Virus record (IMG/VR): IMGVR_UViG_3300001782_000005
Coordinates: 186,001-250,000 of that record
Length of the DNA stretch: 64,000 bases
Direction: 5' to 3' (one strand)
Within the stretch, counting starts at the first letter, position 1. Each line of letters starts with the position of its first letter. Positions 5,983-35,038 of the stretch are shown here, piece after piece. The notes beneath the pieces are model-generated. The model saw only the letters and a program-made list of their open reading frames with translations. It searched no databases and was not told the origin of the DNA. Both the position numbers and the translations under genes were made by a program.

Positions 5983-6453
5983 ATGGCTGGAGATCAAATT
6001 ATTATTGCTCCTCATTGTGACGATGAGATCATCGGTTGTTTTGAAATTCTAAATAAGAATACTATAGTTGTTTATACTGAACCCGCTGATCAAAAGAGAA
6101 GAGATGAGGCGGCGAAATTATTAAAAGATCACCAATTAGTTAAGGGTCAATTATTCTTTAAAGATATTCCCAGTACTATTATGTCACCTAAGAATATTTT
6201 TTATTTCCCTGATCCAGCCTATGAAATTCATCCTGCCCACAGAAAATGGGGATCAGTAGGTGAAGCGATGCTTAGAAGTGGATTCGATGTTATTTTCTAT
6301 TCTATTCAAATGAACGCTCCGTATATTCATGAAACCAAAGAACCTGGCGAGAAGAAAAGATTGTTAGATTTAGTTTATCCAAGTCAAATTAATCTATGGT
6401 TGAATGATGCAAAATATTATCTTTTTGAAGGAAGATGTAAATGGATAATGTAG
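5983..6453 (+). CDS. PIG-L/LmbE-family N-acetyl deacetylase
   Basis: IAPHCDDE metal motif and HPAH motif. Confidence 0.75.
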   Translation: MAGDQIIIAPHCDDEIIGCFEILNKNTIVVYTEPADQKRRDEAAKLLKDHQLVKGQLFFKDIPSTIMSPKNIFYFPDPAYEIHPAHRKWGSVGEAMLRSGFDVIFYSIQMNAPYIHETKEPGEKKRLLDLVYPSQINLWLNDAKYYLFEGRCKWIM

Positions 6454-6908
6454 AGAGACCTAGTTGGAATAAATACTTTATGGAAATGGCCCATTTAGCT
6501 AAGAGCCGTTCAACTTGACTAAGGAGAAAAGTTGGAGCTGTCCTAGTTAAGGATCGGCAAGTAATAGCGACAGGGTATAATGGAGCACCGACTGGACAAA
6601 AGCATTGTCTCGATATAGGGTGTTTAAGAGAAGAGTTAAATATTCCATCTGGTGAAAAGCATGAGTTATGTAGAGCTGTACATGCCGAGCAAAACCTAAT
6701 CGCTCAAGCATCAAAACGTGGCATATCCAGTGAAGGTGCGACTGTTTATTGTACAACATTTCCATGTTTTATATGTTCTAAACTTCTAATAAACTCAGGT
6801 ATATCAGAGATATACTATGAAGAGTACTACAATGCTCCAGAGACAAAAGAGATGCTCGAAGAAGCGAATATTAGGTTAATTCATTGGAAAGGAGAAGAGG
6901 GTGAGTAG
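6441..6908 (+). CDS. dCMP deaminase (ComEB-like) with in-frame TGA at codon 26; absent from ORF track
   Basis: Manual translation [37 protein letters not shown]...GYNG...HAEQN...PCFIC...GE; TGA 6516-6518 sits at the usual RSTC cysteine. Confidence 0.85.
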
Positions 6909-7848
6909 ATTATTTTTTGTTCCACAATTGCCAATAAAGATGAGATATCAGGAATGGTGGTTCACACAGATTCCAGAGCAATTATCTAAGTATTTTGATA
7001 AAATTATTGTAGTGGGTGAACAATATGCTTTTACTGAGGGTGTTTCTAGCGGCAAGGATTTCTCAAATATTGAAAGAGCAATTAAATTTGAATGTAAACA
7101 AGTCAATGAGTTTTTAAATTATGACTTAGGAGATAGCGATTTTCTACTTCACGCGGATCTTAGTTTTCCTGGTATATTTCATAACGTATTGCATCATAAA
7201 CAGGTCAAGAACGCATTTGTGATGTGTCACGCCACTTCAAAGAACAAACTTGATTACTTTACCCCAGTCAGAAACAGTAAAGAGGCAGTTGAGTGTGGTC
7301 ATGCGAGATCATATAAAAAAGTATTTGTTGCTAGTGAATACCATAAGAAAAAATTGGGGTGGACAAATGTTGTAAATTTAGGAGCATTACCTAATCCTTC
7401 ATTTAAGGGTTGTAACTCCGAGAAGGTTTATCCTATTGTCTCAGTTGCTAGACACTCTGTTCAAAAAAGGACTAAGTCAATTGAAGACGCCGTAAGAAAG
7501 AGATATGGAGAAATAATTGATGCTCCTCAATTTTTAGAATGGTATGGTTATTATGATTTTCTAGGGAGCTCGGAGTGTATGTTAATTACTAGTAAGGAAG
7601 AGTGTTATGGTTACCAAGTTATTGATGCGGTAATAAATAATTGTATACCAATTGCTCCTAGAGGTTTTTCATATCCTGAGCTATTACCAGATGAATATCT
7701 TTATAGTGGAATAGATGAGTTATTCGAAATTCTAAGATGGACTGATGGGAAGGGAGTTAGAGGTTTAAAAGTTCCCAAGCTTCTTAATCAAGAAAAGATT
7801 GACAACTTTTATCAAAACCTTGTAATGGAGATGAAAGATGCCGTTTAA
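6901..7848 (+). CDS. GT-B fold glycosyltransferase (GT4-like)
   Basis: C-terminal [12 protein letters not shown]...PIAP...YPEL pattern. Confidence 0.7.
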
Positions 7849-8347
7849 GATATTCAATAAATGGCTCTTCGATGGAAATAAAAAATCAAAAATTGATCCC
7901 AGTTTATTGAAATATAATTCACCAATTACTAATATGTATGTTATGGGTCTATTTCAGAGAAGTGGGAAATTAAATCATTATTTAGATAAGTATTTTAATA
8001 ATATGGGTCTATATTATTTAGATAAGGAGGAGTTCTTTAACTTCATTAAGAAGTGCGTAATAGACTTTAGGATTAATCGAAGGAATATAACATTCTTTCC
8101 CAGAAAACCAAGCGATGATTTATTTAATGCACTAAGGAATCGAGTGGCTACATTGAAAAGTGATGACCTTGATTTATTAACTCAATTGGTAAATAAATCT
8201 GATGATAAAGAAGCAATCTATAGTTCTCTTGGTATTGATAAAAAACCAAAAGCATGTAAAATTCCAAACCGTTCAATGAAGCAAAAAAATAAAGTTAGTT
8301 TAGAAGAGTTTATGGAGAATTTCACCACCATAGAGATAGGAAAATAG
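7838..8347 (+). CDS. Hypothetical protein
   Basis: Coupled ORF; no diagnostic motif recognised. Confidence 0.55.
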   Translation: MPFKIFNKWLFDGNKKSKIDPSLLKYNSPITNMYVMGLFQRSGKLNHYLDKYFNNMGLYYLDKEEFFNFIKKCVIDFRINRRNITFFPRKPSDDLFNALRNRVATLKSDDLDLLTQLVNKSDDKEAIYSSLGIDKKPKACKIPNRSMKQKNKVSLEEFMENFTTIEIGK

Positions 8348-8373: not shown

Positions 8374-9003
8374 TTAAATATCTGTCAACTTTTTTGCAAT
8401 ATCTTCTGTTAAGACTGGAGTAGAAACTGTTATTGGTTTTTTTCCCACTCCTTTGCACCTTTTGCACCTAATTACCTCCTTGATTTTTCCTGTATTTACT
8501 GGTCTTGATTTATTACCAGATCCTAAGCAAGACTTGCATTTTATTACTCTTTTTCTTTTGATAGTTTTTCTGTACTCGTATATTCCTTTACCCTCACAGG
8601 TTCGACAAGTCTTTGTACCAACCTTACCTGTGCCTTCACACCTCTTACATTTACTTCTGGCTATACCTGTGCCATCACATAATTTACATGGAAGCACAAG
8701 GATATCATAATGAAAATCGGGTCTGAATCCTTTTCCCCTACAATTCGGGCAAGGATTATTTATGGGGATTCTAATGTAATATCTAGATTTTTCAGCTAGT
8801 TGATCCTCGATTATTGCTGCTATTAGTGTATTTTTTGCAGTGATAATCTTCTCTGTCCCGTCCTTGTCTCCTTTTAGATCTTCGAGTAAATTGACAAAGG
8901 ATGCTATAATGATTTTCTCATCAAGTTCATCAATTTTATTAACGAGATCTAATGCCCATATAGCATTGTCTATCATATCTTGCTCAATACATGATTTAAT
9001 CAT
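8374..9003 (-). CDS. DnaJ-type zinc-finger repeat protein
   Basis: Six CxxCxGxG repeats; no J-domain HPD motif. Confidence 0.7.
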   Translation of the reverse strand: MIKSCIEQDMIDNAIWALDLVNKIDELDEKIIIASFVNLLEDLKGDKDGTEKIITAKNTLIAAIIEDQLAEKSRYYIRIPINNPCPNCRGKGFRPDFHYDILVLPCKLCDGTGIARSKCKRCEGTGKVGTKTCRTCEGKGIYEYRKTIKRKRVIKCKSCLGSGNKSRPVNTGKIKEVIRCKRCKGVGKKPITVSTPVLTEDIAKKLTDI

Positions 9004-34854: not shown

Positions 34855-34887
34855 AAAAAAAAGTACTCATAACGAGTACCTTTTTTT
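34855..34887. terminator. Bidirectional hairpin between tRNA-like RNA and array
   Basis: A8-GTACTC-ATAAC-GAGTAC-C-T7. Confidence 0.7.
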
Positions 34888-34895
34888 CTAAAGGG

Positions 34896-35038
34896 TGGTA
34901 GGGGGTGGGAATCGAACCCAAAGACGGTATTGGCAGTTGAAAGGAGGAAAGACCGCCAACTTTGGAAAAGAGTCCTCCCGACCGTCTTGGATGGTGGTAG
35001 AACAACCATCCAGCATTCCGGTTGCCATTCCCCCTACC
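34896..35038 (-). ncRNA. tRNA-like RNA with 9-bp acceptor, 4-bp T-stem and very long branched variable arm
   Basis: GGTAGGGGG/CCCCCTACC-A, TGGG-TTCGATT-CCCA T-arm, GGATGG/CCATCC arm, AGACGGT/ACCGTCT variable stem. Confidence 0.7.

What the first reader, a model, noticed from the sequence alone, without database searches (positions are those of the whole stretch)
6441..6908. dCMP deaminase with in-frame UGA at a conserved cysteine: candidate phage selenoprotein
Seen: an otherwise intact 155-codon gene (RPSW..YF, VGAV, GYNG, HAE, PCxxC) has TGA at codon 26 where the family has Cys (RSTC, likely structural Zn ligand). The TGA lies at the base of a hairpin (TTGACTA-A-GGA...TCC-TAGTTAA, 6515-6550) with a small upper stem AGT-TGGA-GCT starting 11 nt after the codon, loosely like a bacterial SECIS. 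Other genes end normally at TGA, so this is not genome-wide recoding. Inference: Sec insertion by the host machinery. Alternatives: a one-base TGY to TGA nonsense mutation or a sequencing error.
Basis: partly seen in the sequence, partly recalled or inferred. Interest (0 to 1): 0.75.

Follow-up and report, generated by a model that had tools for sequence, protein, structure and literature searches.

The report
Phage dCMP deaminase with translated UGA
A family of giant marine-sediment phages keeps a stop codon (UGA) exactly where all related dCMP deaminases have an invariant cysteine. The gene is still under strong selection on both sides of it, so the UGA is being read, most likely as selenocysteine, which would make this the first phage selenoprotein.

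Summary
Window 6441-6908(+) is a complete dCMP deaminase gene (HAE, PCxxC, GYNG) with TGA as codon 26.

It is not a sequencing error or a recent nonsense mutation:
- The same TGA stands in at least 10 distinct sequences (79-98% nt identity) from independent metagenomes.
- These sequences form one clade.
- pN/pS is about 0.11-0.13 on both sides of the TGA, and the frame is kept.
- All 119 nearest full-length homologues (58-69% identity, many labelled Desulfobacterota) have Cys at that position.

The 277-kb phage otherwise uses the standard code. This is its only credible in-frame TGA. It encodes no tRNA-Sec, suppressor tRNA, SelA, SelB or SelD.

A different hairpin (6538-6556, loop AGUUA, 26 nt after the UGA) is present in all 10 TGA-type sequences. 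It meets the published bacterial SECIS consensus and is absent at the same place in 8 Cys-type homologues. That consensus is also met at about 20% of random positions, and covariation is weak.

Best reading: host-dependent, SECIS-type recoding of UGA to selenocysteine (about 0.5). Rivals are SelB*/tRNA-Cys(UCA) recoding to Cys and SECIS-independent leaky readthrough. No phage selenoprotein turned up in the literature I searched.

The parts
6441..6908 (+). dCMP deaminase gene (ComEB/T4 Cd type), 155 codons plus stop, interrupted only by TGA at codon 26
   Evidence: PDB relatives are 2HVV/2HVW, 4P9C, 1VQ2 and 2W4L, found via a Cys-type homologue.
6441..6515 (+). N-terminal 25 codons (helix 1, ..[20 protein letters not shown]), in frame with the rest
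   Evidence: Conserved in all relatives with synonymous differences. Pooled pN/pS is 0.11 over the 19 alignable codons. The frame is kept despite a 3-nt indel in L004.
6516..6518 (+). In-frame TGA at the position of an invariant Cys (aligns with T4 Cd Cys19); the proposed recoded codon
   Evidence: TGA in the window, L002-L004, L021, L024, L025, L027, L029, L036, L049 and L053-L060. Cys in 119 of 119 nearest full-length homologues. Followed by C in 9 of 10 distinct sequences and by G in L049.
6519..6905 (+). C-terminal 129 codons (VGAV, GYNG, loop-3 Cys/His, HAE, PCFIC). No in-frame ATG/GTG/TTG for 111 codons after the TGA.
   Evidence: dN/dS is 0.032 against L004; pooled pN/pS is 0.126.
6538..6556 (+). 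Conserved hairpin ('hairpin 2'): stem 6538-6544 / 6550-6556, loop AGUUA 6545-6549, 26 nt between the UGA and the loop. Best SECIS candidate.
   Evidence: Meets the bSECIS consensus of PMC13188914 in all five TGA-type sequences run through the scan. 95.7% of cells are paired, against 29-59% when the partner is slid. Energy is -4.2 to -10.4 kcal/mol in 10 of 10 TGA-type sequences and +0.2 to +5.4 in 8 of 8 Cys-type. Weak points: about 20% of random positions in this genome meet the consensus, and the covariation shuffles are not significant (111 of 500).
6537..6568 (+). Alternative, mutually exclusive hairpin ('hairpin 3') using the same 5' strand (6537-6544) paired with 6560-6568
   Evidence: RNAalifold consensus on 10 sequences. 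Energy is -8.2 to -9.7 kcal/mol in 8 of 10, but -4.5 in the window and +1.7 in L004. It has no G in the first two loop positions, so it does not fit the bSECIS consensus.
6515..6550 (+). Real in this sequence but not conserved.
   Evidence: Only the UGACU/AGUUA core persists, and both of those strands are invariant coding sequence.

Best explanation
The gene encodes a functional dCMP deaminase whose codon 26, UGA, is translated rather than terminating. The most likely mechanism is bacterial-type selenocysteine insertion supplied entirely by the host. In that model SelB carrying Sec-tRNA(Sec) is recruited by the conserved hairpin that starts 19 nt after the UGA (apical loop AGUUA), and Sec takes the place of an otherwise invariant cysteine. 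That cysteine is one of six invariant non-catalytic Cys/His residues. It probably binds the secondary, loop-3 zinc of dCMP deaminases. The full-length enzyme would then supply dUMP for thymidylate, or modified-base, synthesis during infection. Shown: the UGA is conserved, it aligns with an invariant Cys, it is flanked by equally constrained coding sequence, it is unique in the genome, and a clade-specific hairpin follows it. Inferred: that the hairpin is a SECIS, that the host has selABCD, that the inserted residue is Sec, and that the residue is a zinc ligand. The confidence of 0.5 is for Sec specifically; that the UGA is decoded at all I put at about 0.9.
For: 1. The UGA is conserved in at least 10 distinct sequences of 79-98% nt identity, taken from IMG/VR, JGI, ENA and Logan assemblies. 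A 26-member protein cluster consists only of 115-aa truncated gene calls. The nine member loci whose DNA was fetched all carry the TGA.
2. Purifying selection acts on both sides. dN/dS is 0.06 overall at dS 0.97 against L004. Pooled pN/pS is 0.11 upstream and 0.13 downstream. No start codon exists that could express the downstream part alone.
3. It is a Sec/Cys pair: 119 of 119 nearest full-length homologues have Cys. No full-length homologue above 69% identity appeared among the 120 best hits listed, so no Cys revertant within the clade was seen there.
4. The TGA type forms one clade, SH-aLRT 97, nested among Cys types.
5. Hairpin 2 fits the published bSECIS consensus (PMC13188914) in all five TGA-type sequences scanned. 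It has negative energy in all 10 TGA-type sequences and is unstable at the homologous place in 8 Cys-type genes.
6. The nearest cellular homologues are labelled Desulfobacterota and the samples are marine sediment or seawater. The one top-ranked organism with a phylum label visible in BSepDB's Table 2 is a Desulfobacterota.
7. There is no genome-wide TGA recoding and no other credible in-frame TGA.
Against: - The host is unknown, so the presence of selABCD is untested. The phage encodes no tRNA-Sec, SelA, SelB wing domain or SelD-type domain.
- The bSECIS consensus is permissive: about 20% of random in-frame positions in this genome satisfy it.
- Covariation in the hairpin rests on one compensatory pair plus wobble-tolerant transitions, and 111 of 500 shuffles do as well.
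- A competing hairpin is about equally conserved.
- All TGA-type sequences are one clade, so the TGA-hairpin association is a single evolutionary event.
- The residue is not an obvious redox-active catalytic Cys, which is where Sec usually sits.
- No TGA-type dCMP deaminase was found in 185,579 species genomes with the motif used, and 'deaminase' occurs nowhere in the main text of the four selenoprotein papers searched.
- Invariance of the third base of the codon is only weakly informative on its own, because 9 of 42 fourfold sites are also invariant.
Confidence: 0.5

Rival explanations
1. The UGA is recoded to cysteine, not selenocysteine, by the SelC* tRNA-Cys(UCA) / SelB* / CysS* system described in Desulfobacterales and Syntrophobacterales. 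It would use the same kind of downstream hairpin.
For: PMC5389517 describes this system in exactly the lineages whose deaminases are nearest to this one. The position needs Cys in every homologue. A hairpin follows the UGA.
Against: The natural function of SelC*/SelB* is itself unproven. The host is unknown. Nothing here distinguishes Cys from Sec. If plain Cys were the product, TGY would do the same job at no cost, so retention of TGA would need a regulatory reason.
Confidence: 0.1
2. This is SECIS-independent leaky termination. UGA in a weak context (UGA-C) is read at low frequency by a near-cognate tRNA (Trp-CCA or Cys-GCA), possibly by the phage's own tRNA-Trp and tRNA-Cys. That would give a small, perhaps deliberately throttled, amount of full-length enzyme.
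For: UGA is followed by C in 9 of 10 sequences. From my own knowledge, not tested here: UGA-C is the weakest terminator in E. coli (Poole et al. 1995), and phage Qbeta uses UGA readthrough for its A1 protein. The phage carries only four tRNAs, and two of them are the near-cognates of UGA. They are adjacent, Cys(GCA) and Trp(CCA). The hairpin evidence is statistically weak.
Against: In bacteria the usual near-cognate product is Trp, and the site is Cys in 119 of 119 homologues. One relative has UGA-G. UGA-C is also typical of genuine Sec codons (my own knowledge). The short product is only 25 aa, so there is no useful two-product ratio as in classical readthrough. The clade-specific hairpin would be unexplained. 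The tRNAs show no suppressor anticodon.
Confidence: 0.25
3. The gene is a dead or dying pseudogene inherited by a group of closely related phages, or the TGA is an assembly or sequencing error.
For: A single TGY-to-TGA change would produce it. Gene callers treat it as broken and give 115-aa calls.
Against: dS is about 1 with dN/dS 0.03-0.06, and constraint is equal upstream and downstream of the TGA. There are no further stops or frameshifts in 10 diverged copies. The same base appears in independent assemblies from several studies.
Confidence: 0.04
4. The host or phage uses a genetic code in which TGA is a sense codon (code 4 or 25, or a late-gene recoding phage with a suppressor tRNA).
For: Such phages exist (my own knowledge).
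Against: The standard code gives 91.5% ORF coverage, and TGA ends 23% of long ORFs. The only in-frame TGA with coding sequence on both sides is this one; the 11 other candidates are shadows of long ORFs on the opposite strand. There is no UCA-anticodon tRNA.
Confidence: 0.02

Closest known systems
Bacterial selenoprotein genes with an in-ORF SECIS (for example E. coli fdhF), as summarised by the bSECIS consensus in PMC13188914
   Same: In-frame UGA aligned with Cys in homologues. A hairpin lies immediately downstream inside the ORF, with a 5-nt loop, G at loop position 2 followed by U, a 5-8 bp stem and 26-nt spacing.
   Different: The gene is encoded by a phage that carries none of the machinery. 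The protein family (zinc-dependent dCMP deaminase) does not appear in the selenoprotein papers I could search. The residue looks like a secondary-zinc ligand rather than a redox catalytic residue. Selenium incorporation is untested.
Poxvirus selenoproteins (molluscum contagiosum GPx1-like, fowlpox GPx4-like; PMC8310308)
   Same: A virus-borne gene whose UGA must be redefined by the host's Sec machinery. In fowlpox the SECIS lies in the coding region.
   Different: Those are eukaryotic viruses with eukaryotic SECIS elements, and the genes are captured versions of known cellular selenoproteins. Here the cellular homologues all have Cys, so the UGA arose within the phage lineage.
SelC* tRNA-Cys(UCA) / SelB* opal recoding in Desulfobacterales and Syntrophobacterales (PMC5389517)
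   Same: UGA at a Cys/Sec position could be read as Cys by a SelB-like factor. This is the same bacterial lineages as the nearest homologues.
   Different: No link to such a host has been shown, and no selC*-like tRNA with a UCA anticodon is present in the phage.
Qbeta coat/A1 UGA readthrough (own knowledge)
   Same: A phage gene in which a UGA is read through by host translation.
   Different: In Qbeta both products are functional and the identity of the inserted residue is unimportant. Here the short product is a 25-aa stub and the position is an invariant Cys.
Solved dCMP deaminases: S. mutans 2HVV/2HVW, cyanophage S-TIM5 4P9C, T4 Cd 1VQ2
   Same: Same fold family by sequence: HAE/PCxxC catalytic zinc, GYNG allosteric motif, and a secondary zinc associated with loop-3 (PMC4683357). 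The TGA aligns with T4 Cys19.
   Different: All of these have Cys at the site. I could not retrieve the ligand assignment for the secondary zinc; it rests on memory and on the conservation pattern.

Membership tests
dCMP deaminase (Pfam PF00383, ComEB / T4 Cd type) | Profile match above the curated cut-off | tested here: met
   74.9 bits against a cut-off of 25 for the 129-aa piece; PHROG 174 at 4e-43.
dCMP deaminase (Pfam PF00383, ComEB / T4 Cd type) | Catalytic zinc motifs H-A-E and P-C-x-x-C, and the G-Y-N-G allosteric motif | tested here: met
   All are present in the translation. The motifs are as defined in PMC12088426.
dCMP deaminase (Pfam PF00383, ComEB / T4 Cd type) | Deaminase activity on dCMP | not testable with these tools
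   Needs expression and an enzyme assay.
Bacterial-type selenoprotein gene | In-frame UGA conserved among homologues, with coding constraint on both sides | tested here: met
Bacterial-type selenoprotein gene | Sec/Cys pair: homologues carry Cys at the UGA position | tested here: met
   119 of 119; viral homologues L005-L010 and L015 have TGC/TGT.
Bacterial-type selenoprotein gene | Downstream SECIS meeting the bSECIS consensus (3-9 nt loop, 4-16 bp stem, G in the first two loop positions, 16-37 nt spacing, MFE <= -7.5) | tested here: inconclusive
   Met by the same hairpin in all five TGA-type sequences scanned and absent in Cys types. However, about 20% of random positions also pass, covariation is not significant, and a rival fold exists.
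Bacterial-type selenoprotein gene | selA, selB, selC and selD available in the translating cell | not testable with these tools
   The phage has none. The host is unidentified; the only hint is that the nearest homologues are Desulfobacterota.
Bacterial-type selenoprotein gene | Selenium in the protein | not testable with these tools
   Needs 75Se labelling or mass spectrometry.
Programmed stop-codon readthrough (Qbeta A1 type) | Two useful products in a set ratio, with the inserted residue unimportant | tested here: not met
   The short product is 25 aa, and the position is an invariant Cys in homologues.
Genome-wide TGA reassignment or suppressor-tRNA recoding phage | Many in-frame TGAs, TGA avoided as a stop, and a suppressor tRNA | tested here: not met
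SelC*/SelB* Cys recoding | A host carrying tRNA-Cys(UCA) with an 8/4 structure and a selB paralogue | not testable with these tools
   Host unknown; the system is described in PMC5389517.

The most novel reading that the evidence does not exclude
This is the first bacteriophage-encoded selenoprotein, and the first selenocysteine in a zinc-dependent nucleotide deaminase. The Sec sits at a secondary-zinc ligand rather than a redox centre, and it arose from Cys within a phage lineage. The phage's dTTP (or modified-base) supply would then depend on the host's Sec machinery and on selenium availability. That would be a new kind of host-range and nutrient dependency for a virus of bacteria.
Probability: 0.45. 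Interest if true: 0.85.

Novelty: new variant of a known kind. Interest (0 to 1): 0.72.

Why it matters
UGA recoding to selenocysteine is known in cells and in two poxviruses. The selenoprotein reviews and databases I could search do not mention phages or deaminases.

If the reading is right, it shows three things. Phages can evolve their own selenoprotein genes and exploit host SelB. Sec can replace a probable structural-zinc ligand. Standard gene callers also miss such genes systematically: here they produced 26 truncated 115-aa 'dCMP deaminases' in public databases.

Even if the residue turns out to be Cys or Trp, this is still a conserved, selected, single-gene stop-codon redefinition in a phage nucleotide-metabolism enzyme. 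It can be tested directly with a small reporter.

Tried and rejected
- Megablast and blastn of the region against 50,697 GenBank phages: no match.
- Rfam at gathering threshold on the whole window: nothing.
- tRNA search in related records: only the near-identical record holds the tRNA region, so it was uninformative.
- First motif scan (RST-TGA-x-RRKVGAV) found only the closest relatives. Relaxing it found the LRRQ group in metagenomes. Eleven of those 17 hits, and the single genome-contig hit (a Nitrospira MAG), were chance matches.
- Scan for CxxU/UxxC-type TGAs elsewhere in the genome: 112 noisy hits and nothing credible.
- Exact copies of the hairpin loop motif elsewhere in the genome: none.
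- Zinc-ligand check by co-folding a Cys-type homologue with Zn: the tool does not fold this kind of complex.
- Papers giving the secondary-zinc ligands (Marx & Alian 2015 and others) are not held.
- ARAGORN with introns allowed gave only a forced, unconvincing call for the tRNA-like element.
- The SD-like AAGGAG just after the TGA is an Arg-Arg codon choice and is not conserved in relatives. I rejected it as a signal.
- Synonymous-site suppression around the hairpin: not distinguishable from the rest of the gene.

Full report
**The observation.** Window 6441-6908(+) reads as a 155-codon dCMP deaminase. It carries all the family motifs: RPSW..YF, VGAV, GYNG, HAE and PCFIC. TGA is codon 26, at 6516-6518. 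The 129 codons after the TGA hit Pfam PF00383 at 5e-21 and the PHROG dCMP deaminase family at 4e-43.

**The genome.** The window is bases 186,001-250,000 of a 277,131-bp IMG/VR virus record with direct terminal repeats and 36.7% G+C, that is, a jumbo phage.
- The standard code gives 91.5% coverage by ORFs of at least 100 aa, and TGA terminates 52 of 226 long ORFs.
- I scanned for in-frame TGAs with coding-like sequence on both sides and no nearby restart codon. This gave 12 candidates. Eleven are shadows of long ORFs on the opposite strand, and only the deaminase is real.
- The phage has four tRNAs: Pro, His, Cys(GCA) and Trp(CCA). It has no tRNA-Sec and no suppressor tRNA. It has no SelA, SelB wing domain or SelD-type AIRS_C domain.
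- Genome-wide recoding is therefore excluded, and any Sec machinery must come from the host.

**Is the TGA real and maintained?**
- Logan contigs from three runs of marine sediment or seawater match the window exactly across the codon. These are assemblies, and two may be the source sample.
- The same TGA appears in related contigs: L002 and L003 (identical protein), L004 (84% nt identity), and a further group found by a degenerate motif scan of metagenomes, namely L021, L024, L025, L027, L029 and L036.
- The protein database holds a 26-member cluster of 115-aa 'dCMP deaminases' that all start at the GTG of QVIATG. I take these to be truncated gene calls of TGA-type genes. I fetched DNA for the representative and three further members (L049, L053-L060). 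Every copy has TGA at the codon and an open frame on both sides.
- In total there are 10 distinct sequences around the TGA. Nine are full length, at 79-98% nt identity, and 33 of their 42 fourfold-degenerate sites vary.

**Is the gene translated across the TGA?**
- Against L004, dS is 0.97 and dN/dS is 0.06, and 0.032 downstream of the TGA.
- Pooled over all pairs, pN/pS is 0.112 for the 19 alignable codons upstream and 0.126 for the 129 codons downstream. Both halves are under the same purifying selection, in one frame. A 3-nt indel near the N-terminus of L004 keeps the frame.
- In the window there is no in-frame ATG, GTG or TTG for 111 codons after the TGA, so the downstream part cannot be expressed on its own.
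- Pseudogene, recent nonsense mutation and sequencing error are therefore rejected. The UGA is decoded.

**What should be there?**
- The 119 nearest full-length homologues (58-69% identity) all have Cys at this position, mostly as RSTC.
- In the same set H55, C56, C61, H74 and C77 are also invariant, besides the catalytic H81, C109 and C112. Five of those six non-catalytic Cys/His residues lie in loop-3. Marx et al. describe loop-3 as the site of the secondary zinc of dCMP deaminases (PMC4683357).
- The TGA aligns with Cys19 of T4 Cd. I infer that residue 26 is a ligand of that secondary zinc.
- Many of the nearest named homologues are from Desulfobacterota: Dissulfurimicrobium, Desulfofervidus, Desulfobacterales, Syntrophobacterales and Desulfonauticus. 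There the gene sits in a housekeeping SHMT-dCD-NrdR-RibD context.
- In a quick maximum-likelihood tree the TGA type is a single clade (SH-aLRT 97) nested among Cys types. The careful search did not finish.
- No full-length homologue above 69% identity appears among the 120 best hits listed, so I saw no Cys revertant within the clade.
- A motif scan of 185,579 species genomes found no TGA-type deaminase.

**The RNA signal.**
Only the UGACU/AGUUA core persists, and both of its strands are invariant coding sequence. GGA/UCC breaks in 6 of the 10 sequences. The upper AGU/GCU stem loses a pair in L004. The energy of the whole structure is about 0 to +2.5 kcal/mol in 7 of 10 relatives.
- A different hairpin is conserved: stem 6538-6544 / 6550-6556 with loop AGUUA at 6545-6549.
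- It meets every item of the published bacterial SECIS consensus: a 3-9 nt loop, a 4-16 bp stem, G in the first two loop positions (usually followed by G or U), 16-37 nt spacing, and MFE of -7.5 or below (PMC13188914). In all five TGA-type sequences scanned it does so with 26-nt spacing and constrained MFE of -8.2 to -13.4.
- Across 10 sequences 95.7% of cells are paired, against 29-59% when the 3' partner is slid. Three pairs vary on one side only. One pair is compensatory: U-A in eight sequences, G-C in L004, and a U·C mismatch in the window.
- The same columns have positive folding energy in 8 of 8 Cys-type genes, four cellular or metagenomic and four viral, but -4.2 to -10.4 kcal/mol in 10 of 10 TGA-type genes.

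**Caveats on the hairpin.**
- About 20% of random in-frame positions in this genome pass my implementation of the consensus, and about 12% do so with a stem of at least 5 bp.
- The column-shuffle control is not significant (111 of 500).
- G and U on the 5' strand make transitions on the 3' strand pair-preserving by default.
- Synonymous variation in the region is not visibly suppressed.
- RNAalifold on 10 sequences prefers a mutually exclusive longer hairpin (6537-6544 with 6560-6568) that is about as well conserved.
- All TGA-type genes are one clade, so 'TGA goes with the hairpin' is a single event.

**Interpretation.** A conserved in-frame UGA under selection, paired with an invariant Cys in homologues and followed by a clade-specific hairpin of SECIS geometry, is the standard signature by which bacterial selenoprotein genes are called (PMC12013277). 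I therefore rank host-dependent Sec insertion first, at about 0.5.

Two related readings remain.
- The SelC* tRNA-Cys(UCA)/SelB* system of Desulfobacterales and Syntrophobacterales could insert Cys at such a codon (PMC5389517).
- SECIS-independent near-cognate readthrough is favoured by the UGA-C context in 9 of 10 sequences. The phage also carries adjacent tRNA-Cys and tRNA-Trp genes, which are the two near-cognates of UGA. Against this reading, the usual bacterial product would be Trp at an invariant Cys, one relative has UGA-G, and the short product is a 25-aa stub.

**Comparison with what is known.**
- By mechanism it resembles bacterial in-ORF SECIS recoding (fdhF type).
- By biology it resembles the poxvirus GPx selenoproteins, the only viral selenoproteins named in a 2021 recoding review (PMC8310308).
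- The prokaryotic selenoproteome review and BSepDB mention neither phages nor deaminases, and the two other selenoprotein papers searched mention no deaminase. BSepDB's supplementary family list is not held, so I cannot fully exclude a prior listing.
- I class it as a new variant of a known kind.

**What is not shown.** Four things remain untested: the identity of the host, the availability of Sec machinery, the inserted residue, and the role of residue 26. The decisive experiments are ordinary ones: mass spectrometry or 75Se labelling, a reporter with hairpin and selB mutants, and host identification.

Noticed in passing
G000:C1:80243-80346 (-), = L038:1501-1604; outside the window: A tRNA-like element about 1.4 kb from the tRNA-Cys/Trp pair. 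It scores best against Rfam tRNA-Sec (29.8 bits, under the 47-bit cut-off). It has an 8-bp acceptor stem, a 5-bp T stem, a long variable arm, and a 9-bp anticodon-like stem with the 7-nt loop UAUUAUU, but an over-long D region. ARAGORN does not call it. It resembles the irregular 'allo-tRNA' class of PMC5389517. It has no UCA anticodon, so there is no evident link to the UGA.
   Followed up: partly
window 34897-34983 (-): A second tRNA-like element (tRNA-Sec model 22.3 bits, E = 0.05). It has a good T arm and an 8-bp stem capped by the 14-nt loop CUUUCCUCCUUUCA. A perfect 15-bp terminator-like hairpin follows immediately at 34855-34887. Function unknown.
   Followed up: partly
G000:C1:78662-78817 (-); outside the window: The phage's four tRNAs include adjacent tRNA-Cys(GCA) and tRNA-Trp(CCA), the two near-cognate decoders of UGA. 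The tRNA-Cys has an unusual C1-G72 first pair with U73. The near-identical relative (the record holding L003) carries the same set.
   Followed up: partly
window 5983-6453 (+), 6901-7848 (+), 7838-8347 (+), 8374-9003 (-): The gene order is conserved in all relatives: a 156-aa protein with an HCDDE motif (its end overlaps the deaminase start by 13 nt), the deaminase, a roughly 300-315-aa protein (GTG start overlapping the deaminase stop in the window), a roughly 170-aa protein, and a CXXCXGXG zinc-finger protein. In L049 a family-B DNA polymerase with a UDG domain follows. The first, third and fourth have no Pfam or PHROG match. This may be a nucleotide or DNA-modification module.
   Followed up: partly
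L049:2730-2903, L053:1194-1403, L059:1230-1403: In the LRRQ-type relatives an extra 57-69-aa ORF lies between the 156-aa gene and the deaminase. The deaminase then starts about 60-100 nt further on. The window and L004 lack this ORF.
   Followed up: no
L053-L055 (deaminase codon 74): One TGA-type lineage has Asp in place of His74, which is otherwise invariant (ERDELC instead of ERHELC), and Ser in place of Leu57. So the putative secondary-zinc site is not completely fixed within the clade.
   Followed up: no
window 6521-6526: A perfect Shine-Dalgarno-like AAGGAG lies directly after the TGA. It comes from Arg-Arg codon choice (AGG AGA), is lost in about half of the relatives, and is followed by no in-frame start codon.
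   Followed up: yes
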